Assembly: GCF_006345805.1 (NCBI RefSeq) | Contig: NC_042999.1 | Coordinates: 76,632,001 to 76,696,000, forward strand | DNA: 64,000 bases | Direction of reading: 5' to 3' | Source: Octopus sinensis | Lineage: Eukaryota | Shown: piece after piece, positions 2,732 to 60,730 of the stretch | Numbering within the stretch: the stretch's first letter is position 1 | Layout: each line of letters begins with the position of its first letter | Position numbers and translations under genes: made by a program | The notes under the pieces: model-generated | Databases searched by the model: none | What the model was told of the DNA's origin: nothing | Seen by the model: only the letters and a program-made list of their open reading frames with translations

Positions 2732-2813
2732 TGTGTAATTGGTAAAGAGAACAACAAACGTTAAGGCAAGGCAAACTTCTCAAGTCATATTATTATTGGA
2801 AAAAAGATTCAAA

Positions 2814-2869
2814 GTCTTACAGGTGTTTCTGGGATATCCCAGAGTATAAGATATTCCGTCTTCGGAGAC
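2814..2869 (-). ncRNA. Second decayed hammerhead copy in the inverted arm
   Basis: The minus strand reads GTCT-CCGAAGA-CGGAATATCTTATACTCTGGGATATCCCA-GAAAC-ACCT-GTA-AGAC, with a different core substitution from the other arm. Confidence 0.5.
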
Positions 2870-3182
2870 AAATACGGAAAATGAGAAGGGTAGAGATTAG
2901 TGAAATGACGACATAGAGGACAGGAGTAAAGGAATAAGATGAAGAAAGAGAAGAAAAAAAGAAGCATGTTATATGTATATATTATACTATCAGGACTTCA
3001 ACCTACATGATTTACGCAGGATTGCATCTAAGGACTTGGGGACTTATTTCTACAAGATCAGAAAGCTGAACTGTGAACTTTTAAGCTTCTTTTTCCTTCT
3101 CTTTCTTCATCTCTTTATTCCTTTACTTCTGTCTTCTATGTCTTCATTTCATTAATCTATACCCATCTTATTTTCCCTATTT

Positions 3183-3238
3183 GTCTCTAATGACGGAATA
3201 TCCCATACTCTGGGATATCCCAGAAACAGCTGTAAGAC
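3183..3238 (+). ncRNA. Decayed minimal type I hammerhead ribozyme
   Basis: Layout is GTCT (stem I), CTAATGA (core, canonical CTGATGA), hairpin ATATCCCA-TACTC-TGGGATAT, GAAAC-AGCT-GTA, AGAC (stem I partner). The predicted cleavage triplet GTA ends at 3234. The core carries a G-to-A change and the stem II closing pair is non-canonical. Confidence 0.6.
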
Positions 3239-3390
3239 TTTGAATCTTTTTTTCCAATAATAAAAACGTATATGACTTGACATGTTTGCCTTGCACATCT
3301 AGGTAGCACAGCGGAATAGGGGCCACCTTAGACTCTGAGGTCAAAACAAATCTAGGTCAACAATAGAAGGGAGTTACAGGAAGCTAGCTG

Positions 3391-7015: not shown

Positions 7016-7234
7016 GAATATTGGTTTCAAATTTTGGCTCAATGTTAGCAATTTCAGGAGAGGGGCTAAGTCGATTACATCGACAATAGGGTTCAACTGG
7101 TACTTATTTTATCGACCCAAACCGATGAACTGCAAAGTCGACCTCACAGAATTTGAACTTAGAACGTAGAGGCGGACGAAATGCCGCTAAGAATTTTGTC
7201 CGACTTGCTAACGATTCTGCAAGCTCGCCGCCTT
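7016..7234 (-). mobile_element. tRNA-derived SINE, family N (Nin-domain-like), near full length
   Basis: Head aaggcggcgagc..., B-box-like gttcaaatt and a central gtcgactttgc...ttcatc...gtcgataaaataagtaccag domain shared by many copies in the window. Confidence 0.85.
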
Positions 7235-9602: not shown

Positions 9603-9806
9603 TGCTGGGCGAAATTCGTAGCCGTATTTCGTATGTCGTTACGTTCAGAGTTCAAATTCCGCCGAGGTCGACTTTGCCTTTCATCCTTTCGGGGACGATA
9701 AATTAAGTACCAGTTACGCACTGGGGTCGATGTAATCGACTTAATCCCTTTGTCTGTCCTTGTTTGTCCCCTCTGTGTTTAGCCCCTTGTGGGTAGTAAA
9801 GAAATA
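9603..9806 (+). mobile_element. SINE family N, young copy, tail type 1
   Basis: High identity to 30488-30720 and to the reverse complement of 18503-18735. Ends gtgggtagtaaagaaata. Confidence 0.9.
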
Positions 9807-11653: not shown

Positions 11654-13809
11654 CGTTCTTGTGTAAATGAAGTGTAATATCTACTAAGGTTTGATGTATT
11701 CGCTGTCTATTATTGGGACAGCAGTTTATGTATTATTATGCACCAGTACCATCCATATAGCAAATCACCCAGAAAGAGTTAGCGCAATAGTTTTCCCCCC
11801 ATTTGTTTGCTTGACTGCTTGTATGAGTACCAGATTTGATATGTAAGAATATATTGAAGAGAATTTCTTATTTATGAGAGGAAGATTTGGCAAAATAATC
11901 ATCTTTAGCAAGTTATTTCGATGTCAATAACGCGACCCAGCTATATTCAAAATATCATAGATTTTGTGAATTGTACAGGTTATGTAAAAGAAAACATTAT
12001 AACAGTAGGTAAATAGCGACGCATTTTGCTTCAGATAATAAAAGTCTCTTGAATGCATGTTAAGATTGGAATTACTGCAATTCTGTTCAGTGTGAACACT
12101 TGAAGACTGATGTGGAATGAAATCGAAGACTGAAATTGAAGACCTATGTCGAATGATGTCAAAAAAAGAACAAAATTCTAGTTTAGGAGAAGAAAATTAG
12201 AATATTATAAAAGGTGGGACAGTAGAAGTGAAGGAAAGACTTATGATGAGTTCACCAAATTGGCTTAGGCAGAGGAAGTAGCATAACCCGAAGGGTGAGA
12301 GAGTCACAAAGGAAGAGATAACGTGGCCTATTCTTCTCCAGGCTATAGAAACAGACGGAGTTGAACATTCTACTTCAAAGTAACAAAATACTGGTCTGTT
12401 AACGTTTATTGAGAAAACCACATGACAAAGGCATTCACGCCATAGCCATTCAATCACCTTTTTAGATGATGGCCACATAATTCAATGTGCCCCTTTGCTA
12501 AGGAATTTGTATATAATTTAAGAGAAATTAACTAATTGTTTCTAGTATGTAGAAGCTCCTTCGTTATTTATTGTACTGCTTAAGAAGTTTCTATTTAAAT
12601 TGAGAAATATAACGCGAAAATGACAGACATACACCATATACATCCTATACTAATGTACTTTTGTTAATGATAGCTGTAGAGAAACAAACAGTGAAATAGT
12701 CATGAACCCAGAGAGAGAGGGGGGAAGAGAAAGAGAGAGAGAAATGGAGAGAAAGAGAGAGAGAAAGGGAGAGAATGATAGAATAAGAAAAGAGCTATTG
12801 AAGTAGCAATATACAAGTTATACGATGCTTCAGCAACATTTTAAGCTGTTTTGTGGCCTAGTGCCAATGCCAGACAATATATATTTTAAACTGCCTGAAT
12901 TGGCCAATATTGCAGGAGAACCTTGGACGCTCAATTAAATGCATTTCTTTATATATATTGCGACATCCTTCTCGTCTCAGTACAGTACAGTTCAAGTAGT
13001 AGGGTTGATATAAAGGACAGTTCCATTCCAAAAATATATGACCTCGTGTCTGTGTTACAAATGATTATGAAATTATGCTCATTTTAAACTGATATTTCCT
13101 GCGGTCTGTTCTGTTTTTCATTCCTCATGCTCCATGTCCGATCGAAGAAGCAGCCCAGTATAATGAACTCGAATCCACCAACTTGAACTACATCTCCAGC
13201 AAATACAGATTTTTGCCTTCACCACAAATTACAGTGGATTGATATGGCTGAGTACTTAACCTCAGAAGGATGTGAGATCTGAGTTCAGAAATTAAAGTGA
13301 CGCAACAAAAGAAGCCTACACCTGTAATTTTATCCGACGTTTTACGGAATCCGTCAATCCACCAGAAAATGCTAAATCCCGTACCATAAATCCCGTAATA
13401 TAAATGGAACATGTATGTCTGTAGAACAATAGGTATCCCCGATCGGAGGTATACTTATAGCCGTTATACCAACCAAGCATGAACGTCGCGGATTCCCATT
13501 CTGCTTGCTCTCTCTTTCTCCCTCTCTCTCTCACACACACACACATACATACATGCGCGCGCGCATAGAGACATTCGTAATAAGGCAAACAGTAACCAAT
13601 GCTTGAAGCAACTGGGTTTTATCTCAAAAGTTTTCTGTGCTTTACTTTGTCTATTTCCATTTGAGATTGCTTCTTTTTTTTTTATTTATATTTCTGTGTT
13701 TCTTCTAACAGGAATGCTTTCTATATAACAGACTATAAATGTCAAACGAAATTTGAATTCGTTGTTAGAATAGAGTACGTCAAGGATTTAAAGGGATTTG
13801 GTGGGGGTA

Positions 13810-14131
<322 letters not shown>

Positions 14132-15661
14132 GGATAGAGAATGAAACGAGAAGATGAGCGAAATCAAAACGTACAAGTTGAAGACAAGATTGGGGAAACT
14201 AGTCGAAATAAAAATTCATAGCTTCAGTTCACTCACAAACACAGACTTTCATTGACTTTTGTAAGAAATACATCAAACAAGAGAATGACACTATATTTAT
14301 TATTCAACGACTAGCAATGAATCTGATTTATAAAGACAATTGTAAATGTATTGAATCGTGTTCAGACGACACTCAGATAAGATCAGAGGCGGAGAACTAC
14401 ACTGATTTGATACGGATCTGAAAGTCATACATTAGGTGTGTTTTAACAAGCCGTTTTCCCTTTTGACATTATTTCCTCATTTCTTATACACACACACACA
14501 CACACACAAGTACATATGTTTATATAACGTGCGTTTATGCACGCATATATAGTATCGCATAGCATAGATGAATCGGACAGACACTCGAAAACAGAGACGT
14601 TGTCATGTATATCAGCGAAATAGAAATACAGACATTAATATTTCACACAAACACGTGTTTCTAATTGCAGCACAACATTAAAACAGACAGGTATTGTTCT
14701 TACTATAATGACTTCTCAGTAGACGTAGTAGTTTAAGAAGTTACAGTAGAAGAACACGGAATTGTGGAATTCTTATAAATGTCTCTTTTGCAAGTAAAAG
14801 AAATAAAATGGGTGTATGTTTGTGTGTGATGCTCTTTGTTGCGTATGAGTGCGTGGATGTGAGAAGACATAGCGTATGGTTTGTATGGTACGAATATGAA
14901 AGTGATGCTTTGAATGCTGGCTTATGAACTGTGACTGTGTGTATTGTGTTTTGTTGTGTATGTATGCATGGTAGCGAAAGATTGTAAGGTCTGGTGGATG
15001 CCTAACAGTGTAGAAGTTTGCAGTTTCGGTAAATTGCAGGCGGCAGTTCAAAACGAGCTGTTGTTCCCTGAGGAAGTGGGAGATCAGTGTTCAGAGATAA
15101 GCCAGAAACCGATGGGTGTTGGACAGAGTAATAGATAGAGTGAAAAACTGAGTCACAGGTGACTGGTTGATTTGAATGTTTCAAAGGTATTATGCAAACT
15201 TGCCCGAAAATCAGCTGTGCGTTTTGTAATCACGTGGTTTAAAACTAGACCAGAATAGCTCCCATAACGATTATTTTCCATTATAACCCTCCGGATTTAT
15301 AGCATTGCGAGTGAAATTATCCAGAAACATGTATATATATATATATTCAAACACACATGTACATACATTATATATATGCATAAATATACACATATATACA
15401 TTGTGTGTGTGTGTATGTGTGTGAGCGCATGGCCTAGTGGTTGGGGTGTTGCACTCGTGATCTAGCGATTGTGACTTCAATTCCTAGACGCGTGGCACGC
15501 AGTGCACCTGTTCAGGCAACGTTAAGAGAGTGAGCTAATATGCACCATAAACATTTGATCACGATAAACAAGTTATTTGAGCAAGTCGTTCGGCAAAAAG
15601 CTGAACGTCATATGTCGTTTTTGACGGGGAAGTCCATCGTATATATATATGCACACACACA

Positions 15662-18319: not shown

Positions 18320-18735
18320 TATTTCTTTATTGCCCACAGGGGGCTAAACATAGAGGGGACAAATAAGGACAGACAAACGAATTAAGTCGATTACATCGAC
18401 CCTGTGTGAAACTGGTACTTATTTAATCGACCCCAAATGGATGAAAGGCAAAGTCGACCTCGGCGGAATTTGAACTCAGAACGTAGCGGCAGACGAAATA
18501 CCTATTTCTTTACTACCCACAAGGGGCTAAACACAGAGGGGACAAAGAAGGACAGACAAACGGATTAAGTCGATTATATCGGCCCCAGTGCTTAACTGGT
18601 ACTTATTTAATCGACCCCGAAAGGATGAAAGGCAAAGTCGACCTCGGCGGAATTTGAACTCAGAACGTAGCGACAGACGAAATACTGCTAAGCATTTCGC
18701 CCGGCGTGCTAATGTTTCTGCCAGCTCGCCGCCTT
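18320..18735 (-). mobile_element. Dimeric SINE family N insertion with an 18-bp TSD, inside an older SINE
   Basis: A 183-bp unit (18320-18502) plus a full unit (18503-18735). ccacacgctaacgattct is repeated at 18302-18319 and 18736-18753. Confidence 0.88.
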
Positions 18736-21700: not shown

Positions 21701-24402
21701 ACTGATTCGAAACCTGCTTCTTTGAAACTTTCTGGCTTTATGCCCGCTTCATCCTAAATTTCTTGATACTCACGATTTCCCCACTTCTCATAAATTTTAT
21801 AACTTCTGTTAAAGCAAGTGTGTGTTAGTGTGTTTTTTAAGTGTGTGCATTCATCTGTATAAACTCGAGGGTGTGTACTTGCATTTTGCCTAGAAAGGAT
21901 AAACCTTGCACGAACGTGTGAATTCTAGACATATAGTCAATCAAAGACATTGAAAGATGCGAACACACGCATGCTTGCGTGTTCAGATTTGCTTTAAATG
22001 GTCAATGTTTGTTTGTTTCTATTCCTATTCATTTAATACTTGTTTTTATTACTGTTTAGGTAGCGACGAATAAATCTCAGGACATCAGCAAAGTTTAGAA
22101 TAATAATGCAAATATCTTGAAGTGTTTAAACACGGATGATGTCTAAGCTAACAGAATTCAGTTAATTTTGCTTCTTACGCTGATGCTTCATATATATTTA
22201 TATTGATATTTGTGTTGTCATTGATGTTGTTAATCTTCTTATCAATATTCGAATTTCAAAGAAGTTTAATCAGTGGGGAGTTTAAACAGAAGAATTAACG
22301 AAACAGTATTAATTAGACCTGAAAATATCATCAAATATAAAGGAGGAATTTTTAATCGAAAAAACCAACCCATTCTGACGATTCGTTAATAAACACTTCG
22401 GTAGTTTCACGGAAAAAAAATTCAATAGGAATTGAAATGCAATAAAAATAAAAAATATAAACTATCATATTCAAACCAAGCTGTCGTGTAAAAGCGTCAT
22501 TCTGTTAACAATCATCATATATGTTAATCTAACTTGAAAGAGATTCAACACTATAAAAATTAAATGTATTATAATAATCATGTAATCACGTGTCTAACCA
22601 AAGTTTCGTACCTCATCTCCTCTTCCGGGAAAATTATTTTATTCTTCCAAACTAAATTTAAATGCACTTTAGCTCGCAGTAGTCATTTCCCCTCCACGCC
22701 ATTTTGAAATTGTTTTTCGATAATTACAAGAAAATTTCATTTCAGAAAATTCGAACGCAAATGCAAAAAATAAACACAATCAGTGTCTAAAAAAGAATAA
22801 ACAAATATATAAAGGACCATATAAAAGATCACAAGATAGTCATTATTTCTAATTTGTTGTTATGATCGTCAAAATGGAAGAAATAAAGGCAAAAGCAAGT
22901 TCCCTTTTTAAGTAATCTCCTAAACATTGGAAAACTGAAGCAAGTACCTAATGCAAAACAAATATTATTTCTGTCTATAATCTCTGTACACATCCTTGTC
23001 CATCGAACTATACGTGACTTCTCAGAAGAAGGGGGAAAATGGAAGTAACAAATGCCTCAATACAAGAGAATCTATAACGAAAAAAAATTGTGAGAACCGT
23101 AGGATTTTGCCACCGAAAATAAACATGTAATTACACAAACGAACTCAGATATTATCGACTAAAGCACGAAATGTAATGGCTGTCTTTTTTCTTCAAGCAC
23201 AATAAATCGTGGTCCGAACAGATCGGCTTAAATCCGTTATTTGTTATTTGATCGTTTATAAATCCATAACTCAAGGATAAATAACGAGTTGTAACTACAA
23301 ATGAAGGATTTGCTTTACTATATTTTGTTTATAATTTTCTTCTTTTTTTTTTTGTAATTTGAATTGATGTCGAAAGGATAAATACTTCAAACTACTGTAT
23401 GATTATTTTACTAGAATGTCAATAATACTTAGACTAAAGCGTAAAAGAAAAAGAAATATCGAAGATTAACTCTAATAGGTAGATTTATGAGTAATAAATG
23501 CAAATGGTGAACAAATCTATTCAAACAAATCGAATAGCAAACACGAATACATCAACGAAAAGTAAAGACAGAAAGAAATGCCTTGTAGAACTAAGAAATG
23601 CGAAGCAAAATTACAGTTACTTCCGGTTAATATTTTCCTTTTATTTGATTTTATAGATTTCGTTTTCTTTTGTAGTTATTTTCATCTATTTTATCTCAGA
23701 TATGTTGATGCTTTCTTCATTTAGATAAACAGCGAAGAAGCTATAAAGTATTTAGGCGACCATATAGAAATGTTAATGAGTTTATTAACTTAAATCCGTT
23801 TATTCAATTTCGTACAGTGTTTCGTGAACAAGCATACAATTTAAAGATTTATCCAAATCTAAAGCCGCTCGGAACATTAGCTATTCAATATGTGACTAAC
23901 GGTAACCACCCGTCAGTACACTTTGTCACATCACACCGTCTCCAATGTACTTCACACAAAGAATTTTTTTTAACGAAATAAACAAATATCAAAAAGTAAA
24001 TTCTCAATTTAAATAATTTGATGAAAATAGAATTATACATTAAATTTCCTCTAAATTTTATTTCCGTAATTCAATTTTCAATTAATTGAATTTTATTTAA
24101 ACAATATTAGAAATGTTATTCAATATATTTAAGCAATATTTTAAAACGTTATTCAATATATTTAAAGTGAGTTTGCAAATTGTGTTAACGATATTTATTC
24201 AATGCGGTTTTTTGATTTGTTTTTTTTTTTTCTGAGTACAGTTTTAAATGTTTTATTAAAGAAATCGTATAAAATTGTAAGTGGTAAGTCTTTGGCTAGA
24301 CAAATAATGACCCAGTTTTGATTCCAACTAAAATCCTGCTTAATTCGCTTACACTGCTAATTTGATGGTCACATTTTTCAATTCATTCACCAAAAATGTA
24401 TG

Positions 24403-24449
<47 letters not shown>

Positions 24450-24492
24450 TGTGTGTGTATAGATACATACAAATAAATACATATATACGTAT

Positions 24493-24673
24493 ATACATTA
24501 TAAGTATGTGTATGCTTGCACGTGCGAACTCATGTAAATATATGCATACAAATATTACATATATATGTATACACATACATACGTACGCACACATACACAT
24601 GCACACACACACACACACACACATCACACGAACACACACATATGGCTTCCGTGAATTTATAATGAAGTTCAAG
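24493..24673. repeat. Left arm of a long inverted repeat (partner 25980-26150)
   Basis: Identical to the reverse complement of 25980-26150 except for (CA)n length. Confidence 0.95.
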
Positions 24674-24736
24674 AGGTTAAATACCTTATTTAAAAGTACC
24701 TTGATTTTTAGCCGCTGAACGAGGAAACAAACTCAC

Positions 24737-24861
24737 ATCGTTCCAGTCCAAATCAACTTGTTTTTGTATATCAATGTTATCCTGCTGCTTTTCATATAAT
24801 ATCTCATGATATGGGAGGAATTTAGCAAGAATTCTCATAAGTAAAACTATGCCTTGATGGC
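24737..24861 (-). CDS. Best candidate coding exon, 125 nt, phase 1-0 (GHQGIVLLMRILAKFLPYHEILYEKQQDNIDIQKQVDLDWND)
   Basis: Acceptor tttctatgtcgatacag and consensus donor gat|gtgagt. A single frame is open and the other two contain stops. The product is unidentified. Confidence 0.5.
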
Positions 24862-25979
24862 CTGTATCGACATAGAAACACTGGCACTCACACATACATA
24901 TGACGGATTGGTCTCCGCCGTTCGACGATTAGAAATCAGTTGTTCCATCAAAGTACCTCCTCCTGAATGAGTGTATGCGGTTAAATATTCCAAAGACATG
25001 CGCATCCTTAGCATAATTTTCAGGCAGAATCTTCGTCAAGCAGTACTACCAAAGCTGTACCTTTTGAATTACGAGTGCAATCCACCCAGGCCTGTACACA
25101 CTTTCTCTCGGGTCGACCCGAAGCTAAAAGAAATGAAGTTTGCCCCAGCTGTCATGCACTGGCATTGAACTTCTTAACTATTCGGCCATGCTGTGCGTAC
25201 TGTACGTAGTTATACGCGTGTGCACACACATGTACTACACACATACAAATACGCACAACAATATACACTACACACATTGATAGTGATAATTTCTAAAACA
25301 AAAGAACACAACTTTGTAAGAATGTACTTTTATTGCTCCATTCGACAACTCACGCAAATAATACATGAAAATTATTCTAAGCCACAAGATTTTTGAAACA
25401 TTCATATTGTTGACATATTTTCAACAACCAATTTATATCAAACTGACAGTAATGTAAATTGTCATTTGACAATCATTTTCTATGTACATTAGGTGAATTT
25501 TCATTGTAATAAACTACATATTTTAGATAAAATTATCATCAGGTATACGTCTACGATACGAGTAACTATGTCAGAATAGACAATAACGTTTAATCATCAT
25601 ATACGAAGCGCTTGACTTTTTAGTAAAGCTAATCACATCATCATTGTGTTTTAAAGAAAGTGGTGAGAAAGAAATATCTTTGCATATTTTGAATTAGGAA
25701 AAAAAAGCATTACCTTAATTTTTCAACCAAACAATCAACTATTTTGCACACAGATAAAAAAAAATTAGATCCATAAAATTAATCATATTGTATGAGAGTA
25801 CTTTTTCAACGAGGTATTACAGCCTTAGGATATTTGCAAAGATCTAATTTCATGACCTCTTCATATTTAAAAGTTGTACATATTGTAATCTTCTTATATT
25901 GTATTCAGTGATGAACAAAAAGATAGCGATACGTATCGAGTTGAGAGAAATCTTTGACATATATTGCATCTGGATATCA

Positions 25980-26226
25980 CTTGAACTTCATTATAAATTC
26001 ACGGAAGCCATATGTGTGTGTTCGTGTGATGTGTGTGTGTGCATGTGTATGTGTGCGTACGTATGTATGTGTATACATATATATGTAATATTTGTATGCA
26101 TATATTTACATGAGTTCGCACGTGCAAGCATACACATACTTATAATGTATGTAAGTATATATATATATATATAGTGTGTGTGTGTGTGTATAGATACATA
26201 CAAATACATACATATATACGTATATA
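25980..26226. repeat. Right inverted arm (25980-26150) plus a direct copy (about 26145-26226) of about 24395-24495
   Basis: Base-by-base alignment. The direct copy has one mismatch in its core apart from TA/GT repeat length. Confidence 0.92.
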
Positions 26227-26227
26227 G

Positions 26228-26265
<38 letters not shown>

Positions 26266-26456
26266 ATATGCATGTATGTATGTTGTATTATGTGGTATGT
26301 ATATTCTATTTTATTAAAGCCGAAAAATTTCACGAACTGTTACTCAGAGTAATTTTGACTTTAATAATATAATATTTTACTCTGTCTTTAGTATTTGAGT
26401 ACTATTTTCTTCCACTTTGTTTGGCACATGTGCTTATTTGTGTGAGTAAATAAATA

Positions 26457-26587
<131 letters not shown>

Positions 26588-30487: not shown

Positions 30488-30720
30488 TAAGGCCGCGAGC
30501 TGGCAGAACCGTTAGGACGCCGGGCGAAATGCGTAGCCGTATTTCGTCTGCCGTTACGTTCTGAGTTCAAATTCCGCCGAGGTCGACTTTGCCTTTCATC
30601 CTTTCGGGGTCGATAAATTAAGTACCAGTTACGCACTGGGGTCGATGTAATCGACTTAATTCGATTGTCTGTCCTTGTTTGTCCCCTCCATATTTAGCCC
30701 TTTGTGAGTAATAAAGAAAC
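30488..30720 (+). mobile_element. SINE family N, full length, tail type 1
   Basis: Complete head-to-tail match to the other young copies. Confidence 0.9.
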
Positions 30721-31267
30721 AGATAACATAAACTACAAATCAAGTACAGGGCTTTATGGAATCGATTAACCCCAACAACTAAAATAACTAATTGCATTAA
30801 GACGCTGTTGAGTCCACTATTCATTCACAAAACTGAGACCGGGACTCGTTATTTTGATAAGAATAACCGTTTAATAACATCACTCGTAATTATAAGAGAC
30901 GGATTCTTTCCATATGCATTTATACACGCATATACACTGCTACATTCCCAATACCAACATACAATTCCATTAGCACCATCACCACCCACACCAATACCAC
31001 CAACATTTCCATACACATAGCGAGCGCTGGTTTTTATCTCTCCATAGATTATAGTGATTATGTCGCAATTTACTAGGAAATTTTTGTACCAACATCCGGG
31101 ACCTAAACTTTAAGAGGCGGTGAAATTTGAAATCCTTTTAAAGAAAGCGTGTGGGGCACACTAACCTTGGTAACAATAACAGCTCATTAAAATTAATTTT
31201 CCGAATATATAATGAGCAGGTTTCTCTCTATACGAAATGGTATGTGTGTGTGTGTGCAAATATAGGC

Positions 31268-33860: not shown

Positions 33861-34833
33861 TTGGGTTGGCAAGAAAGTAATTTCGTTTTTTTATTGTAAA
33901 ATAAACGTCTTTTTCTTTTGTTTTTTTTTTCTTCTTCATACAAAGAATTATATATTTTTCATTTTGTTCGATGACCTTTGCCATCTTTCTGGCAACTTCA
34001 TGATTCCGCCCTCGCAGAACTTCTGATCCTTAGCAGCCAAAAACTGAAGCAAGTGCGATTTAAAGTCATCATCATTATTGAAAGTTTTACCATTCAAACA
34101 ATTTCGCAAACTTCGAAATAAATGGTAATCTGATGGTGCAAGGTCAAGACTGTATGGTGGACGTGACATCACTTCCCAACCAAGCTCCAATAATCTTTCA
34201 CGAGTTAGCAAACACGTTTCTGGTCTAGTGTTGTCATGGTGGAAAAGGATTCCTTTACGATTTGCCAATTCTGGCCGTTTTTCTTTGATTGAATCCTCCA
34301 GTTTCATCGGTTGTTGACAGTAAACATCTGAATTGATCATTTGGGTCCTTGGAAGCAGCTCAAAATATATACCTTTGTAGTCTCACCAAACTGACAGCAT
34401 GACCTTTTTTATGCAATTCAGCTTTCGATGTGGCTTGTGCTGCTTCATTACACTTGGACCATGATCGTTTTCGATTGATGTTATTGTAGACAATCCATTT
34501 TTCATCGCGAGTCATGATTCGTTTAAAATGCTAACCATTTCTGACATGTGTGTTCTGTTAAGCAATCACCACCTTAAACTTCACTTATTTCTTTGTGAGC
34601 CTCAGCAGCTTTCTTGCCTTTACGGAAATAAAAAAAGCAAAATATGGCCAAAATGTTCGTTTTTGCACTCCATGTAAAATTGACACTGAACTAACAACTG
34701 TAAACAAAATTACGCGCAATTTGCTTCTAAAGTAAGATAAAAGTAACGACTATCAAATGTCAAAAGGGAAAAATCATAATATTGACAAAAGTCATTAAAA
34801 AAAATAGTAACTATCTATTTGCGAAAAACGAAA
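33861..34833 (-). mobile_element. Mariner DNA transposon, mellifera-subfamily-like (D,D34D), internally deleted pseudogene
   Basis: TA plus TIR ttgggttggcaagaaagtaatttcgttttt at 33861. ATG at 34673 gives MECKNEHFGHILL...GKKAAEAHKEISEV...TCQKW, joined near 34531 to FKRIMTRDEKWIVYNN. This is followed by FHHDNTRP and PPYSLDLAPSDYHLFRSL (ORF 33948-34340). Only aaaaacgaaa of the right TIR remains. Confidence 0.93.
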
Positions 34834-40390: not shown

Positions 40391-40870
40391 ACTTTCAACC
40401 TTCATCTCTCCGTGGTCGATAAAATAAAGTACTCGTCCTGCACTGGATCGATGTTCATTTCCCTCAAAATTGTTAGCCATTATTATTATTGTTACTATAA
40501 TTTTCATTATCATTCTTGATTTCCGCCGAGGGGGCGATAAAATAAGCACCAGTTGTGAACTGGGGTCGATGTAATCGACTTAACTCCCTCCCCAAAATTG
40601 CTGCCCTTATGGCAAAATTTGAAACCATCATTATTATTATTATTATTATTATATTATCATTATTATTATTAACCAGGCAGAATCGTTAGCACGCCTGGAA
40701 AAATGCTTAGCAGCATTTCGTCCGTCCCTACGTTCTACGTTTAAATTTCGCCGAAGTCGATAAGTACCAGTTGAGTACTGGGGTCGATCTAATTGACTAG
40801 ACCCCCTCCCCCAAATTTCAGACTTTGTGCCTATAGTAGAAACGATTATTATTGTTGTTGTTGTTGCTGT
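40391..40870 (+). mobile_element. Array of three SINE family N copies, each ending in an (ATT)n tail
   Basis: Units at about 40391-40490, 40518-40670 and 40671-40870. Confidence 0.8.
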
Positions 40871-41490: not shown

Positions 41491-43711
41491 AAGTGTGTAT
41501 GTATATGAGTGACTTTTGCCAATGCAGGTGTGATGTGTATGTATACAAGGTTGTACGGTGCGCATATGTGTGTGTTTGCGCGCGCATGTGTGTGTGTGTG
41601 CAAAGAAACACGCATTTTCCTTAGATAAATATGACTCCATATATGAGAAATTTACAAATATCACACTCTTCACACATACGCACACACACACAACACAATA
41701 ACTGAACAGAGCAATCATATGTATATAATTATTTTCATACGAGTTCATAACAAAAAATTTATTAGCAGTATTGTCATGCGCATTCATTCACGCACGAAAA
41801 CAACTTACACTCACACAATTAATAATAAATAACAACAAAGCCTAAATAAGCCCTTGCATCCCTTATTTTCCAAATAGAATTGAAAAGATATGCGACAACA
41901 ACCTGCAGTCTTGCCAACTAATCAAAATAAAGACAAGATTTGAAACGAAAAAAATATTTGATAGAAGAAGGGAGGGCTCTTTTCTTCTCTCATGAATCTT
42001 AATGACACAGGAATGCTATCATTGCTGTGGTATGTCTCCCAGGTTCAACATCACCGTCAGTATAGCGATGTTGTTGTTGTTGTTGTGTGGCGGCGCCTAC
42101 TTGCTTGCGATCCTGTATGTATGTGTATGTTCGTGTGCGTGTATATGTATGACGGTGTCGGATGTTTGTCTGATGATGTTTGTGTGCAATGGCATGAGAT
42201 TTGCATGTATGTGCGTGTGTTCTATCTTGCTTGTTTGTGTGATGGTAGGGATAGATGATGATGATGATGAGGAAGAGGAGGAGGATTGAGTGTGTGTGAT
42301 GGAGCAATGAAGGATGAGAGTGAAAGGGCGCGTGTGTGTATGTATACATGTGTATAGGTGCGTTAATCTCAGTACTAACGCTGACGTTTCAGTTATAGTT
42401 ACTACTCTTAATAATCGTAATACTGGAAATGTCGAGGAGGAGGAGGAGGAGGAGGGGTTGAAGTTGATGATGATCAGTACCACGATAAAGGCGACAACTA
42501 ACTTCCATACAACATATAGCAATCACAACTCAATGCCGCCATTTTCCCCCTCTATTCACCACAACACATGCATTTTATCGAATATCTGTCTCTTTTACAA
42601 GTTGCTACCAAAATTTTGCTTTTTCCAAATTAGCTAACAGTATAGAAACCTACCTAAACTCCCATGCAGCAACTGACAATTCTCTACTCCTCATTCAAAC
42701 GCTACCACAACTGCCATCAAGGGTCTTCCTAAACACTTCGCCTAACCATTTTAATCTACTGAAATACCCTTCCTGTCCACCATTTCCTAACAAGCATCAG
42801 TTTGAAGTGGTTTTAATCTGAACATTAACCACATCTAATCTCCAAAATGTCAGTCAATTTTCAAGGTGCTGTGATTTTAACTTCACCACATATTTGAGGC
42901 TAAATAATGGTTTCAGTGTTTGGATCAAGGACTCAAATAAGAAGAAGGCGCCTACCTTATTTAATTTGGCGCTTTAGTGACCGGTAACAGATTAATCAAC
43001 CCCCGAAAGGATGACAGACAAAGTCGGAAGCAACATCTGAGCCTAGTAAGTAAAGGTCGTGAATTGATTTCACTGCCACATATTTGGATGGATATGAATA
43101 AATGATTTAATCGATCCCAAGAAGTTAATTGTCCTTTATTTTATGGACAACGAAAGAATGCAAAGCTGATTTGCGCATGATTCGAACTCAAAACATAACA
43201 AGCTGAAATTAAATATCCCGAAGCATTATGCCAACACCGACTTCGTTCAGACTAAATAATGTATTCTAATATAGGCACAGTTCCAACTAAATCAAAGAGC
43301 GGTATCAATATAAAAATTCCTGTGTGTTCTGTGTATTTGTCATGTTGAGTTCGATGCGTTGAACATGTACAAACGCCCATTTTTTTTCAGTAAAATAAAA
43401 TATAACAACAGGTCGAGCTACGTAAACCATACGCACACATGCATAAGCACACATTTTTACATATAAGCACGTAATTCAGTCATATACGAAGTTACGGAAA
43501 TCAACGACACAAGACGATATGTCAGGCCGTTTTCTGCCTCCAGGCGTTTGATAAAATGAATGATGGTATAATAGACTATCAGATTTTATTACGTCCTTGA
43601 GGAAGAGAAGCAGTACACGCAAAGGAAGAGCTGGAGAAAGGTGGGGAGGGGTCGTAAATGAGAAGGATTATAGAAAAGGGGGGAGAAGGAGGAGGAAGGA
43701 GGAAAAAAGAT

Positions 43712-43995
43712 TGAGAAGAAGAAGAAGAAGAAGAAGAAGAAGAAGAAGAAGAAGAAGAAGAGAAGAAGAAGTTGAAGAAGAAGAGAGGGAGAAAAGAATG
43801 AAAAGAGAGAAGGAGGAGATGAAGAAGAAAAAGGTGGAGAGGAAGAAGGCGGAGCAGAGGAAATAGAAAGAAAGGAAACAGAAGAAGGGGAGGAAAAGAG
43901 AAGAAGAAGAAGAAGAAGAAGAAGAAGAAGAAGAAGAAGAAGAAGAAGAAGGAGAAGAAGAAGAAGAACAACAACAACAACAACAACAAAAACAA
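43712..43995. repeat. (AAG)n and (AAC)n tracts with a purine-rich spacer
   Basis: Read directly. Confidence 0.95.
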
Positions 43996-44463
43996 CAACG
44001 ACAATGACAACAACATAATGAGACGCAAAAGAGGAGTGAGTGTTGTGTGAAAACAAGGGGGAAATTACACTCAATGCCAATTAGCAAATATAACCTTAGG
44101 TAATTTTATCGTTGCTTTTTCTTTATTTTCTTTTTTATTTGTCATTCATTTATTCAGATGATTATTTTCTTCAAGACTCGAGTTTCTTTGTTTTATCATT
44201 GTTTCTGTAGAGGTATTGTCACTCTTATTATTGGTGTGGTTGATGATGATGGTGATGATAATGATTCTCTTATTTTTATATATTTTTCGTGCTAATTATT
44301 TTTCATTATAATTAACTACGAGAATATTCTTCAACAAGCAAAATCATTATACGCTCACATATATGCGTATTTTTGATACATACATATTTACACACACACA
44401 TAAATATATATAATATACTTATAAGCATATGCATATATCTATCTATGTTTGCATGTATGAATT

Positions 44464-47129: not shown

Positions 47130-47495
47130 GGGCTTAGAAAAACTGAAAGGCCGTTGCAATAAGTGTACGAATCTCAGAGAGGAATATGTTCTTTTCTACT
47201 CTAGGCACAAGGTCCGAAATTTTGGGGGGAGGGGGCTAGTCGATTAGATCGACCCCAGTATGTAACAGGTAGTTAATTTATCGACCCCGAAAGGATGAAA
47301 GGCAAATTCTACCTCGGCGGAATTTGAACTCAGAACGTAAAGACAGACGAAATACTGCTACATTTCGCTCGGATTGCTAACGTTCCTGCCAGTTTGCTGC
47401 CTCTGAGGGGGAAATATCTTGAATAAAATCACAATTAATTCATCCTCCTGTATTTCCTTTTACCCGATACCAGGAACTTTTCAGCACCACCTCAT
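47130..47495 (-). mobile_element. Second MITE copy, interrupted by a SINE (47190-47402)
   Basis: Reverse-complement homology to 17302-17504 on both sides of the SINE. Degenerate duplication ctcagagaggaatatgt / ctgagggggaaatatct. Confidence 0.75.
47190..47402 (-). mobile_element. SINE family N, tail type 2
   Basis: Begins tcttttctactctaggcacaagg on the plus strand and has the family N core. Confidence 0.88.
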
Positions 47496-48727: not shown

Positions 48728-49053
48728 ACGTTCCATAATCTGAAAGCGTTGACCTGAATGGAGTGTATAAGATTTTCCAGGTGTTTACAAAAAGTATAGT
48801 TCTTTCTTGTTTTGTTGCTGTTGTTAGCTATTTCTTGTATTTGCTTAATTTGTTTCTTAATGCTTTTATTTATCTTTACATTCTTCTCTTGTTTTTGTTG
48901 TTGTTGCTATATTTATTTCATTATTTCAATTAGATTTCTGGAGTGCGATAGAAAAGAAAGGAATGTCGGTAATGCCAATGAGCAACTAGAGGAGGGAGGC
49001 AAAGAGGGGGATGTGTGTGTGTGTGAGAGTGAGAGAGAGACAGACAGACAGAC

Positions 49054-49102
<49 letters not shown>

Positions 49103-49348
49103 AAGAGAGACAGAGAGAGATGGCGATTATGATCATAGTGATGGTGTTGGGTGATAAGGAAGATGAGGCGGAGAAAAAGAACAGAGGCATGCAGTAAGAA
49201 AAAAAGATAGACAGAGGAGAGTGAAAAGAAAGGTAAGTGAAAGAATGATGAGAGTAGACAGACAGACAGATAGACAAGCAGACATAAATAAATAAATAGA
49301 TAAATAAATATGAATTGATGCAAATAAATATATATGTGTGTATTGATG

Positions 49349-49387
<39 letters not shown>

Positions 49388-49605
49388 AGACAGACAGACA
49401 GGCAGACAGGCAGGCAGGCAGACAGGCAGGCAGACAGACAGGCAGGCAGGCAGACAGACAGACAGACAAACAGATAGATAGATATTGTGTTAATTAGTGT
49501 GCGCTTGTGTTTTTGTGTCTTTGTTATGGCGTATATATTGTGTCTGTATTTGACTGTATTACTCTGTGTGTGTGTGTGCACATATATACGTGTGAGTGTG
49601 TGTTT

Positions 49606-49650
<45 letters not shown>

Positions 49651-50786
49651 TGTGTGTGTGTGTGTGTGTGTGAGTATTTGGTAGGCGTGTGTGCGTATAA
49701 ACGTGTATTACCTAGATAATGTTTCTGTGTGTGGTTCAGTGTAATTAATATGTGTGAATATGCGTTTTAGAAAAACAGGTATCTATGAGACACTGTGCGT
49801 GTGATATTGTGAGAAGATGAAAGGAGATACAGAGTGGAAAAAAAATCAGGAAGGGTAGAAGGAAAGTGAAAGTGCGACGAGAAAGATGCAATAGAAAATG
49901 TTTATTATATGATTATTATAGACAAAATAAAGTGAGGGCGGTTGCAACATAATAGAGCAGAGAGGGAGTGAGAGAGAAAGAGATAAAGGGGGGAAAGAGA
50001 GTGTTAGTAAAAAAGCAAGCAAATGAGACAGAGAGATCGAGAGAGATACAGAAATAGTGAGAGGCACAGAAAGACGTGGAGAGAGAAAATTGAAAAGAGT
50101 GAGAGAAAGTGAGATATATTTAGAGTAGGAAGTGAACATGAAAATTAGTGAATATAAGGAACGATGTATAAGGAAGTAAGAGAGAAGGTGAGTGATGCTG
50201 TAGAAGAAGAAAAGGAGTACTACAGAGTAAAAATTCAAATAGAGTAGCGACAGGTGAGAAAGTAAGTAGGGAATGTGTGAACTGGTGAGTGAGTGAGTGA
50301 GTAGAAAATATGTAGTAGTATAAACGTTAAAATAGTTGAAGTGGAGAATGAAGCGAAGGAAAGAAGAGTTGTGAGTGAGAGTATGAGTGGAGTGATGTGG
50401 ATCAAGTGAAGATGAAGTAAAAATTAGATGACGATGTAGAAGTTAGAAAAGGTGAGGTAAAAGATTTTCAGTTGTGTGTGTGTGGGGTGGTGGTGATTGG
50501 GTGAGGGGATGGAATAAAGAAAGTGGGAGGAGGAGGAGGAGGAGGAGGAGGAGGTAAAGGAGAGCGTGTAATGAAACAATTTCAATGATAGTTTGAGGCA
50601 GTATGAAATGACTCAGCATTCTGCTTGGAATCACTGAGTGCTTCGTTCATTAAGTTCATGATATGTGTTACATTTTCGCAAGCAAGCAAGCAAGCACAGA
50701 TAGGCACATGCATCGTTACATGCATAGTCGCACATACACTTACTCACACAGCGATAAATAGATAGATAGATAGAAAGAAGGAAATA

Positions 50787-50909: not shown

Positions 50910-50960
<51 letters not shown>

Positions 50961-50971
50961 CTATATATATA

Positions 50972-51046
<75 letters not shown>

Positions 51047-51368
51047 GTATATATATATACATGTGTATGTGCGCGCGCGTGTACATGTATGTATGTGAGG
51101 CGAGAGAGAGAGAGAGATGTGCGTGTATGTATGTTTAAATATATAAACACACCATCGTATTCTTCAGTCTCACACCAAGCTGTCAATCTCTATCAAATCT
51201 GTTCTAGTCATCATCGACAATCTAATTATGTCGTCTGTTGTAACATACTTAACATATAACATATACGTGTGTCTTAAACCATATCGCCCGTTCACTCATT
51301 ACTTATCAATCAGCAAGTAGCTTCAGAATTTACAAACTGCTGCTTTTACCAACTTTTACAGGCAGTGT

Positions 51369-52881: not shown

Positions 52882-53270
52882 CTTTTACTTGTTTTAGCCA
52901 TAAGATTGCGGCCAGTCTGAGGCACCACATTGAAGAATATTTAGTTGAATGAATCGAGCTCAATACGTATTTAGTATTATTATTATTATTTTTTTGTCTT
53001 TTTGAGCCTCGTACTTATTCTATAGGTTCTTAACCGAACCACTAAGTTATGGGGACGTAAACACAACGACACCGAACGTCAAGCAGTAGCGAACGAAGGA
53101 CACTGACACAAAGACACACACACGCACTCACACATACACATATATATATATATACATATATATATACATACATATATATATACATATATATATATACATA
53201 CATATATATATACATATATATATACATACATATACATATATATATATACATACATACATACATACATACA

Positions 53271-53319
<49 letters not shown>

Positions 53320-53435
53320 TTACGACGAGCTTCACTCAGTTTCCGTCTACAACATCAAGTCACAAGACTTCGATTGGCCCGGAGTTATAGCAGAAGACAC
53401 TTGCACAATGGGAGTGAATCCGGAACCATGTTGTG
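52882..53435 (-). mobile_element. SINE family A with an expanded internal microsatellite
   Basis: Both arms are homologous. The internal TA/CATA tract spans about 53110-53320. Confidence 0.78.
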
Positions 53436-54447: not shown

Positions 54448-54817
54448 CATAGATATATACACACACATATATATATATATGTATGTATAAATATATGTAT
54501 ATATATATATATATATATACACGCGCTCGTGTGTGTAAGTGCACGTGTTATGTGTTTTATATATATATATATGTTTATAGGTTAGTATGGCGTGTTGTGT
54601 GTTTTGTAGCCTCAAGTCTTCGTAGTCTTTTTCCACTTAAGATCTCAAGTACTGCATTCGCCATTGTGTTTGCTGCCGTCGTCAGTGTTGTCAGTCTCAT
54701 TGTTTTGGTGTCGATGGTGTTGGTGGTAGTGATTGTCATCGTCGTCGTTGTTATAGTCATTATCAATCTTGTGTTTCTCGGTGTACTTCATATATTTTTT
54801 TCTGTTTTTTTTTTTAT

Positions 54818-54956
54818 CATTTCTACTCTAGGCACAAGGCCAGAAATTTTAAGGGAAGGGGCAAGTCGATTAGATCGACACCAGTATGCAACTGGTACTT
54901 AATTTTATCGACCCCGGAAGGATGAAAGGCAAAGTCGACCTCGGAGGAATTTGAAG
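54818..54956 (-). mobile_element. SINE family N, 5'-truncated, tail type 2
   Basis: Homology to 47190-47402 and 60521-60730. Confidence 0.85.
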
Positions 54957-60100: not shown

Positions 60101-60520
60101 ATTAGGAACACCTCGATTGACTTACGTGTCTAAAATATCTAATTAACAATGAACAAAAATCAAAGACAGATTCCACAAATTTTCTTTTATTCACCCTCTC
60201 CAACAAGCGAGTATTTGTATACATTCTAAAAGAAGCCAATAATTGATAAGGAGCATGTCATGTTGGTCCTTAACGGTTGTAATTGCATCAGTTCGATCCC
60301 AATTAGTTGCTGAACAGAAATTTATGAGGACGTATTCACTAGTGCACATCTTGCTTGAAATCTGTAATGGTTTACGTTGGTAGAAACAGAGGTAAAGTTG
60401 ATTAAATCGACTCAGTATATAACTGGAAATAATTTATATCATCGTCGTCAGAGAAAAGAACATTAAACCAACACTATTGATGTTTAACACAGAACAAAGC
60501 AAATCTAAACTAAATATTAT

Positions 60521-60730
60521 TTTCTACTCTAGGCACAAGGCCTGAAATTTTGGGGGAGGGGCCAGTCGATTAGATCGACCCCAGTACGCAACTGTTACTT
60601 AATTTAGCGATCCCGAAAGGATGAAAAGCAAAGTCGACCTCGGCGAAATTTGAACTCAGAACGTAAACACAGACGAAATACCGCTAAGCATTTCGCCCGG
60701 CGTGCTTACGCTTCTGCCAGCTCACCACCC
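60521..60730 (-). mobile_element. SINE family N, full length, tail type 2
   Basis: Complete homology to the family. Confidence 0.9.

What the first reader, a model, noticed from the sequence alone, without database searches (positions are those of the whole stretch)
24395..26226. Near-perfect inverted repeat plus direct repeat bracketing the best candidate exon
Seen: the arrangement is X-Y-Z-Y(rc)-X. Y (24493-24673 versus 25980-26150) is identical apart from CA repeat number. X (about 24395-24495 versus 26145-26226) is a direct copy. The Y(rc)/X junction has aatgtatgta microhomology. Z (1.3 kb) contains the 125-nt exon candidate, whose donor is about 64 bp from one arm. Inference: a recent template-switch or templated-insertion event seeded by microsatellites. 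In pre-mRNA the arms would pair and loop out the exon, the architecture known to promote exon skipping, back-splicing and A-to-I editing. It could also mediate an inversion of Z, or it could be an assembly artefact.
Basis: partly seen in the sequence, partly recalled or inferred. Interest (0 to 1): 0.7.

Follow-up and report, generated by a model that had tools for sequence, protein, structure and literature searches.

The report
Young inverted-plus-direct repeat in microsatellite DNA
A 1.3-kb stretch of non-coding, microsatellite-rich animal DNA is bracketed by a perfect 171/181-base inverted repeat and an 83/101-base direct repeat, most likely the scar of a recent copying error during DNA repair or replication; the "exon" inside it has no support.

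Summary
The X-Y-Z-Y(rc)-X arrangement is real in this assembly, at almost exactly the reported coordinates. Y1 (24493-24673) and Y2 (25980-26150) are perfectly complementary except for one (CA)5 length difference. X1 (24395-24495) and X2 (26144-26226) are direct copies that differ by microsatellite unit numbers and 2 substitutions. The non-microsatellite parts of Y, and all of Z, occur nowhere else in the 64 kb.

The functional reading is not supported. The 125-nt "exon" has no homologue in 5.8 billion protein clusters or 1.84 billion representatives, and no Pfam domain. It is one of 15 equally good splice-site-plus-open-frame candidates in the window, against about 7 in shuffled sequence. The only coding remnant in 64 kb is a dead mariner transposase.

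The arms would form a 169-bp RNA duplex (about -295 kcal/mol), but only if the region is transcribed, and nothing shows that it is.

Best reading (about 0.4): a young templated insertion. An inverted copy of Y and a direct copy of the adjacent X were placed between Z and the next (TG)n tract.

Rivals:
- a non-autonomous element with terminal inverted repeats, either inserted with an abnormally long target duplication or inserted into a pre-existing X-X duplication;
- an assembly artefact.

An ordinary structural scar of low interest. Long reads and an allele lacking the insertion would settle its origin.

The parts
24395..24495 (+). X1, left copy of the direct repeat (101 nt): AATGTATGTATG-(TA)24-(GT)6-ATAGATACATACAAATAAATACATATATACGTATATA
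24482..24495 (.). 14-nt perfect palindrome TATATACGTATATA at the end of X1. Both the copied X and the copied Y end here. It occurs only here and at 26213-26226 in the window.
24493..24673 (+). Y1, left arm of the inverted repeat (181 nt). The outer ~145 nt are degenerate TG/TA/CA microsatellite; the inner ~33 nt are unique sequence.
24674..25979 (.). Z, a 1306-nt single-copy spacer. It has no Pfam domain in any of six frames and no protein homologue.
24737..24861 (-). Unsupported and probably not an exon.
25973..25977 (+). GATAT at the end of Z. It is repeated at 26227-26231, so the two copies flank the putative inserted block 25978-26226 (CA + Y2 + X2).
25980..26150 (-). Y2, right arm of the inverted repeat (171 nt). 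It is the reverse complement of Y1 minus (CA)5.
26144..26226 (+). X2, right copy of the direct repeat (83 nt), with (TA)9, (GT)8 and 2 substitutions relative to X1. It overlaps the end of Y2 by 7 nt (AATGTAT).
26227..26302 (+). B, the flanking microsatellite island: GATATA-(TG)16-(TGTA)n. It is the presumed site of the break or stalled fork in the templated-insertion model.

Best explanation
This is a young, local, repair- or replication-generated templated insertion in non-coding DNA.

**Inferred ancestral locus.** A, then the X-Y microsatellite island, then Z, then the B (TG)n island.

**Inferred event.**
1. A break or stalled fork arose at the Z/B border, around ...CTGGATAT|ATGTGTG...
2. 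It was repaired with about 250 nt copied from the nearest similar island, 1.3-1.8 kb upstream.
3. First Y was copied on the opposite strand, from its inner end out to the TATATACGTATATA palindrome. This gave the inverted arm Y2.
4. After a switch on the 7-nt microhomology AATGTAT, the adjacent X was copied in direct orientation up to the same palindrome. This gave X2.
5. The new strand was then joined back to B.
6. Polymerase slippage during this synthesis, or afterwards, changed the (CA), (TA) and (GT) unit numbers.

**Shown.**
- The repeat geometry and the near-zero divergence of the copies.
- The microsatellite nature of X and of outer Y.
- The junction sequences.
- The absence of coding signal.

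**Inferred.** The ancestral state, the order of the switches, and the break site.

**Consequences.** They are passive. The product is a perfect 171-bp inverted repeat that would form double-stranded RNA if it is ever transcribed, and that could occasionally flip Z by recombination. No function is indicated.
For: 1. Y arms: 0 substitutions in 171 aligned nt. X copies: 2 substitutions plus changes in microsatellite length. So the event is recent, or the arms have been homogenised.
2. The two copied pieces are immediate neighbours in the source. X1 and Y1 abut and overlap by 3 nt, so all the duplicated material is available within 1.8 kb.
3. X1 plus outer Y1 reads as one native compound-microsatellite island. 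Outer Y resembles other TG/TA/CG islands of the window. The inner 33 nt of Y are unique sequence, like Z. That fits an arbitrary local stretch better than a transposon terminus.
4. There is a 7-nt microhomology, AATGTAT, at the Y2/X2 junction. A 5-nt GATAT repeat, plus a 2-nt CA filler, flanks the block 25978-26226.
5. A 14-nt hairpin-forming palindrome sits exactly where both copies end.
6. No transposase, no domain and no homologue is found in Z in any frame. No other copy of Y or Z exists in the window.
7. Inverted templated insertions next to their template, with microhomology and sometimes several templates, are a described signature of template switching (PMC8421209; four-point model, PMC7954356).
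Against: 1. Three junctions are required, and only one has clear microhomology. The Z/Y2 junction has none.
2. The X copy and the Y copy end within 3 nt of each other (24495 and 24493). An insertion with target duplication explains this for free. In this model it needs the palindrome or a template end as a special reason.
3. The copied tracts (171 and 83 nt) and the template distance (1.3-1.8 kb) exceed those catalogued for short-range template switches. There the median is 12 nt and the maximum 128 nt (PMC7954356), and templates were sought within 100 bp (PMC8421209).
4. The GATAT flank was noticed after the fact, in AT-rich sequence.
5. No allele lacking the insertion, no sister-species locus and no reads were available. 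The ancestral state is therefore pure inference.
Confidence: 0.4

Rival explanations
1. **Insertion of a mobile or captured DNA segment.** Y-Z-Y' (24496-26147) is a 1.65-kb non-autonomous element with 176-bp terminal inverted repeats that landed in microsatellite X. The flanking X copies are then one of three things:
- an abnormally long (83-101 bp) target duplication, from nicks staggered about 90 nt apart and then filled in;
- the product of single-crossover integration of a circle that carried X;
- a pre-existing X-X tandem duplication that was hit exactly at its junction.
For: - Direct repeats abutting inverted terminal repeats are the classic insertion geometry. It explains all four boundaries with one event and no coincidence.
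- The element ends 5'-CATTATAAG...CTTATAATG-3' are flanked by TA on both sides (24494-24495 and 26148-26149). Tc1/mariner-type elements show this, and a mariner remnant exists in the window.
- X being slightly more diverged than Y would fit an older X-X duplication, but the difference is not significant: 2 of 57 against 0 of 171 positions, Fisher p = 0.06.
Against: - From my own knowledge, no eukaryotic DNA-transposon superfamily makes target duplications longer than about 11 bp.
- The X-X variant needs the hit to fall exactly at the unit boundary, among 34 TA sites per unit.
- The flank B is not a third X unit.
- The supposed terminal repeat is mostly degenerate microsatellite, like the host's own islands.
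- There is no transposase remnant and no homologue of any Z frame in 5.8 billion protein clusters.
- There is no second copy in the window or in the searchable DNA collections. The window is too small, and those collections are not of the right kind, for this last absence to weigh much.
Confidence: 0.25
2. **Assembly artefact.** The second Y/X copy, or the placement of Y-Z-Y' between two X copies, was created by the assembler or a gap-closer in a microsatellite-dense region. Alternatively, it merges two haplotypes.
For: - The structure lies wholly within microsatellite-rich sequence, where assemblers err.
- The perfect identity of the arms is what a computational duplication would give.
- No read-level evidence could be consulted.
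- Open reading frames that cross the junctions are absent from the gene-position collection, so there is no independent assembly of the junctions.
Against: - The 64 kb have no N and carry long uninterrupted arrays, for example (ATAG)34 and (TA)24. This suggests long reads that would span 1.8 kb many times.
- The copies are not computationally identical. They differ by (CA)5, (TA)15 and (GT)2, and X has 2 substitutions.
- Known chimeric or fold-back read artefacts give a full palindrome with X inverted, not a direct X with a unique 1.3-kb centre.
Confidence: 0.12
3. **Functional RNA architecture.** The locus lies in an intron-exon-intron context of a minus-strand gene. The arms pair in the pre-mRNA and so promote skipping or circularisation of exon 24737-24861 and ADAR editing of the duplex.
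For: - The arms form a 169-bp duplex with one 10-nt bulge, about -295 kcal/mol on either strand. This duplex is retained in the minimum-free-energy fold of the whole 1656-nt RNA.
- The candidate has an AG acceptor, a GTGAGT donor and an open frame.
- Complementary sequences flanking an exon are known to promote back-splicing and exon skipping (PMC8330042, abstract listed; otherwise from my own knowledge).
Against: - The exon peptide has no homologue.
- The only hit among 1.84 billion representatives is a tandem-repeat pseudo-protein at 9 of 28 identity per unit.
- There is no Pfam domain.
- The polypyrimidine tract is weak, at 60%.
- There are 15 comparable candidates in the window against 7.3 in shuffles.
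- No other coding exon or domain exists in 64 kb apart from a mariner remnant, and no Rfam family matches.
- With the arms undiverged, the structure is too young for conservation to say anything.
Confidence: 0.04

Closest known systems
Templated insertions from template switching (MMBIR/FoSTeS; the 'four-point' short-range template-switch model; polymerase-theta snap-back synthesis)
   Same: - The new sequence is a reverse-complement copy of a nearby template, which creates a perfect inverted repeat.
- A second template is used in direct orientation.
- One junction has a microhomology.
- The event lies in hairpin-prone, repetitive DNA (PMC8421209; PMC7954356).
   Different: - The copied tracts (171 and 83 nt) are much longer, and the template is more distant (1.3-1.8 kb), than in the catalogued short-range events.
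- One junction has no microhomology.
- A single four-point event would have continued from X into a second Y-Z copy, and that copy is absent.
Non-autonomous DNA transposon with terminal inverted repeats (a MITE-like or foldback-like element) with target-site duplication
   Same: - Inverted termini are directly abutted by direct repeats.
- The interior is non-coding.
- TA dinucleotides flank the inverted termini.
- Foldback elements have long arms built of short tandem repeats (from my own knowledge).
   Different: - The direct repeat is 83-101 bp, not 2-11 bp.
- No other copy and no related transposase was found.
- The arms look like the host's own microsatellite islands.
DUP-TRP/INV-DUP and ODIRA-type inverted rearrangements
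   Same: Iterative template switches produce a direct-inverted-direct arrangement of copies (PMC11293582 and PMC10766183, abstracts listed).
   Different: - Those events span kilobases to megabases.
- They triplicate the central segment and use pre-existing inverted repeats.
- Here only about 250 nt are duplicated and nothing is triplicated.
Inverted-repeat-flanked circularising exons and ADAR-edited inverted repeat pairs (for example inverted Alu pairs)
   Same: There is a long, perfect, intramolecular duplex potential around a 1.3-kb loop.
   Different: No evidence was found for an exon, a gene or transcription.

Membership tests
Templated insertion by template switching (MMBIR / four-point model) | The inserted tract is identical to a nearby template and in inverted orientation | tested here: met
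   Y2 is the reverse complement of Y1 with 0 substitutions, 1306 nt away
Templated insertion by template switching (MMBIR / four-point model) | Microhomology at the switch junctions | tested here: inconclusive
   7 nt (AATGTAT) at Y2/X2; 0 nt at Z/Y2; a 5-nt GATAT repeat flanks the whole block. The context is AT-rich, which makes chance matches likely
Templated insertion by template switching (MMBIR / four-point model) | An ancestral or allelic sequence lacking the insert | not testable with these tools
   No genome of this or a related species could be searched. Scans for exact Y motifs in the metagenome and prokaryote collections found nothing
Templated insertion by template switching (MMBIR / four-point model) | Short range and short tract (tens of nt, template within about 100 bp) as in the published catalogues | tested here: not met
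   Tracts of 171 and 83 nt, with the template 1.3-1.8 kb away. Published values: median 12 nt, maximum 128 nt (PMC7954356); templates sought within 100 bp (PMC8421209)
DNA transposon with terminal inverted repeats / MITE | Terminal inverted repeats | tested here: met
   Arms of 176-181 nt, perfect apart from (CA)5
DNA transposon with terminal inverted repeats / MITE | Target-site duplication of superfamily-specific length (2-11 bp) | tested here: inconclusive
   TA flanks both ends, which is compatible with Tc1/mariner. The conspicuous abutting direct repeat is 83-101 bp, which fits no superfamily (the lengths are from my own knowledge)
DNA transposon with terminal inverted repeats / MITE | Multiple dispersed copies in the genome | not testable with these tools
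   There is no second copy in the 64-kb window, but the rest of the genome is not available
DNA transposon with terminal inverted repeats / MITE | Transposase, or a recognisable derivation from an autonomous element | tested here: not met
   No Pfam hit in six frames of Z. No homologue of any Z open reading frame
Inverted-repeat-flanked back-spliced or skipped exon | Reverse-complementary sequences on both sides of the exon | tested here: met
   169 bp of arm-to-arm pairing, about -295 kcal/mol
Inverted-repeat-flanked back-spliced or skipped exon | A genuine, transcribed exon of a gene | tested here: not met
   No homologue and no domain. It is one of 15 chance-level candidates. No gene is detectable in the window. 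Transcription itself is not testable here
Inverted-repeat-flanked back-spliced or skipped exon | Back-splice or skipping junction reads; A-to-I edits in the arms | not testable with these tools
   No RNA-seq data are available
Recombination-invertible segment | Both orientations of Z present among reads or individuals | not testable with these tools
   Only one assembled haplotype is available. The arm length of 171 bp makes occasional flipping conceivable (inference)

The most novel reading that the evidence does not exclude
Y-Z-Y' may be a member of an undescribed kind of mobile element. It would integrate with a target duplication of about 90 bp, or through a long att-like homology (X) from a circular intermediate. 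It would have microsatellite-built terminal inverted repeats, and it would be active very recently in this genome.

A lesser variant is that the locus is transcribed, and the brand-new 169-bp duplex drives circularisation or hyper-editing of a lineage-specific exon.
Probability: 0.06. Interest if true: 0.6.

Novelty: new member of a known kind. Interest (0 to 1): 0.2.

Why it matters
If the structure is real, it is a clean, essentially undiverged example of how microsatellite islands seed complex local duplications that create long perfect inverted repeats in one step.

Such repeats are raw material for inversions, for fragile sites and, when transcribed, for double-stranded RNA.

It matters mainly as a data point on mutational mechanisms, and as a check on assembly quality. 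Nothing indicates a gene or a regulatory device.

Tried and rejected
- **Junction-crossing open reading frames** (25899-26174 and 24362-24718), looked up to find independent assemblies of the junctions: not on record.
- **Exon peptide** against 5.8 billion protein clusters: no candidate.
- **80-aa open reading frame around the exon** against 1.84 billion representatives: one hit, a translated tandem repeat, which is spurious.
- **All Z open reading frames of 24 aa or more, six frames, joined into one query:** 3063 word-sharing candidates, none with E of 1 or below.
- **Pfam on six frames of Z:** nothing.
- **Pfam on non-low-complexity open reading frames of 50 aa or more from the whole window:** only mariner Transposase_1.
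- **Rfam and ARAGORN on the window:** nothing.
- **Exact Y motifs in the metagenome and prokaryote genome collections:** nothing, as expected for eukaryotic DNA.
- **Mariner remnant used to identify the organism:** the best relatives are only 77-78% identical and unnamed. The named ones are insects, spiders and a bat, so they are not informative. The taxon stays undetermined. The repeat landscape reminded me of cephalopod genomes, but that is memory, not a test.

**Origin models considered and rejected**
- Inversion with staggered breaks: it predicts an inverted copy of the start of X at the start of Z, and none is there.
- Fold-back or palindromic chimeric read: X would be inverted and Z palindromic.
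- A single four-point template switch: it predicts a second Y-Z copy after X2.
- B as a third X unit of a tandem array: the alignment score is 40, against 125 for X1 versus X2.
Full report
**1.

Reading 24200-26500 and aligning the pieces gives the following layout.

| Piece | Coordinates | Length |
|---|---|---|
| A (unique flank) | up to 24394 | - |
| X1 | 24395-24495 | 101 nt |
| Y1 | 24493-24673 | 181 nt |
| Z | 24674-25979 | 1306 nt |
| Y2 | 25980-26150 | 171 nt |
| X2 | 26144-26226 | 83 nt |
| B, a (TG)16/(TGTA)n island | from 26227 | - |

- Y2 is the exact reverse complement of Y1 apart from five CA units. There are 0 substitutions.
- X2 is a direct copy of X1 with (TA)9 instead of (TA)24, (GT)8 instead of (GT)6, and two substitutions.
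- The non-microsatellite parts of Y are perfect matches of 62 and 49 nt. They occur only at these two places in the window, and Z is also unique there.
- Other microsatellite islands match X at only 75-82%.
- So this is a specific duplication, not generic low-complexity similarity.
- The window has no N. Reads were not available, so what is confirmed is the assembly.

**2. Surroundings**

- The window is AT-rich (30-40% G+C) eukaryotic DNA crowded with microsatellites.
- It holds a SINE-like interspersed repeat of about 200 bp in at least nine copies.
- It holds an older hairpin-like element at 2766-3294 and a decayed mariner transposase at about 33.9-34.5 kb.
- Pfam scans of all non-low-complexity open reading frames of 50 aa or more found only that mariner domain.
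- Rfam and ARAGORN found nothing.
- The locus therefore lies in gene-poor DNA, either intergenic or in a very large intron.
- The organism could not be identified. The mariner's named relatives are insects, spiders and a bat at 69% identity or less.

**3. The "exon"**

The candidate at 24737-24861 on the minus strand has an AG acceptor, a GTGAGT donor and one open frame of 41 codons. Against it:

- The peptide shares no word triplet with any of 5.8 billion protein clusters.
- A full HMMER scan of 1.84 billion representatives with the 80-aa stop-to-stop frame gave a single hit. It is a translated tandem repeat whose score is the sum of many 9-of-28 matches.
- All Z reading frames together found nothing, and Pfam found nothing.
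- I applied a simple criterion: an AG preceded by at least 60% pyrimidines, at least 100 nt open, and a GTRAGT donor. It returns 15 candidates in the window against a mean of 7.3 in shuffled sequence. This candidate only just passes the pyrimidine filter.

The exon is therefore unsupported. With it falls the case for exon looping, back-splicing or skipping.

The arms would pair. Co-folding gives 169 bp with one 10-nt bulge, about -295 kcal/mol on either strand, and the duplex survives in the fold of the whole 1656-nt RNA. This is a property of any perfect inverted repeat and says nothing about transcription.

**4. Origin**

The junctions are as follows.

- X1 ends and Y1 begins inside the 14-nt palindrome TATATACGTATATA (24482-24495), with a 3-nt overlap.
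- Y2 and X2 overlap by 7 nt (AATGTAT).
- The Z/Y2 junction has no microhomology.
- GATAT occurs at 25973-25977 and again at 26227-26231, so it flanks the block CA+Y2+X2.
- TA flanks the inverted termini on both sides (24494-24495 and 26148-26149).

*Reading A: templated insertion.*

- The ancestral locus was A-X-Y-Z-B.
- A break or stalled fork at the Z/(TG)n border was repaired by copying Y on the opposite strand, and then the adjacent X in direct orientation, before rejoining B.
- In favour:
  - All the material is local.
  - The two templates are neighbours.
  - X1 plus outer Y1 looks like one native compound-microsatellite island. Outer Y resembles other islands at 17.5 and 37.1 kb.
  - The inner 33 nt of Y are ordinary unique sequence.
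  - Inverted templated insertions near their template, sometimes from several templates, are a described signature of template switching (PMC8421209; PMC7954356).
- Against:
  - It needs three junctions, and only one has clear microhomology.
  - The tracts and the template distance are well above the catalogued short-range events.
  - Both copies end within 3 nt of each other, which requires the palindrome or a template end as a stalling point.

*Reading B: insertion of Y-Z-Y' as a unit into X.*

- This explains every boundary with one event. It is the textbook look of a transposon with terminal inverted repeats, and the TA flanks suit a Tc1/mariner-type element.
- However, an 83-101 bp target duplication fits no known superfamily (from my own knowledge).
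- The escape route is a pre-existing X-X tandem hit exactly at its junction. That needs a coincidence of a few percent, and B is not a third unit.
- The arms are mostly host-like microsatellite. Z has no transposase trace, and no other copy is visible. The 64-kb sample is too small for this last point to count for much.

*Reading C: assembly artefact.*

- It cannot be excluded without reads.
- The copies differ at three microsatellites and two bases.
- The contig is gap-free through long arrays.
- Known chimeric-read artefacts would invert X.

I rate A at about 0.40, B at about 0.25 and C at about 0.12. The remainder goes to mechanisms not considered here. The functional RNA reading is rated at about 0.04.

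**5. Age**

- There are zero substitutions in 171 nt of Y and 2 in about 57 non-repeat positions of X. The difference is not significant (Fisher p = 0.06).
- Both X changes lie in tetranucleotide-like repeats.
- The event is young, or the arms are kept identical by gene conversion.

**6. Comparison with what is known**

- The locus behaves like a large, multi-template version of the inverted templated insertions ascribed to MMBIR/FoSTeS-type switching. It fails the "short-range" criteria of the published catalogues.
- It has the geometry of a transposon with terminal inverted repeats. It fails the criteria on target-duplication length and on coding or derivation.
- It has the pairing potential of circRNA-promoting inverted repeats (PMC8330042, listed). 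It lacks a demonstrable exon or gene.
- It is one more instance of a known kind of structural mutation. It is not a new system.

**7. Verdict**

- The structural interpretation is plausible but not unique.
- The functional interpretation is unsupported.
- Interest is low (0.2).
- The decisive data are spanning long reads, an allele lacking the insertion or a sister-species locus, a genome-wide copy count, and RNA-seq.

Noticed in passing
window 2766-3294: An older hairpin-like element. Its arms, 2766-2965 and 3085-3294, are 86% complementary and separated by a spacer of about 120 nt. It has no obvious target duplication and no other copy in the window.
   Followed up: partly
window 7017-7234, 9604-9806, 18320-18501, 18503-18735, 30489-30725, 40676-40850, 47186-47402, 54817-54955, 60513-60729: An interspersed SINE-like repeat family of about 200 bp, present in both orientations at 75-93% identity. 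It includes a head-to-tail pair at 18320-18735. ARAGORN and Rfam do not recognise it as a tRNA.
   Followed up: partly
window ~33948-34500, minus strand: A decayed mariner transposase (Pfam Transposase_1) with at least one frame break. The closest relatives are 77-78% identical, on unnamed short contigs. The named relatives are insects, spiders and a bat.
   Followed up: partly
window 13742-14176, 43579-44087, 48800-50240: Long purine/pyrimidine-biased simple-sequence arrays. GC skew reaches +0.40 around 48-52 kb.
   Followed up: no
window 26450-26587: (ATAG)34 preceded by (TAGG)8, an uninterrupted array only about 220 nt to the right of the structure. Together with (TA)24 and several (TG)16-24 tracts, it suggests a long-read assembly.
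   Followed up: no
window 50914-51099 and 53103-53322: Two microsatellite arrays of opposite polarity about 2 kb apart, giving an 82-85% inverted match. It is purely microsatellite-based, unlike the Y pair.
   Followed up: no
window 24482-24495 and 26213-26226: The 14-nt perfect palindrome TATATACGTATATA occurs only at the ends of the two X copies. In X1 it is also the point where the inverted copy of Y stops.
   Followed up: yes
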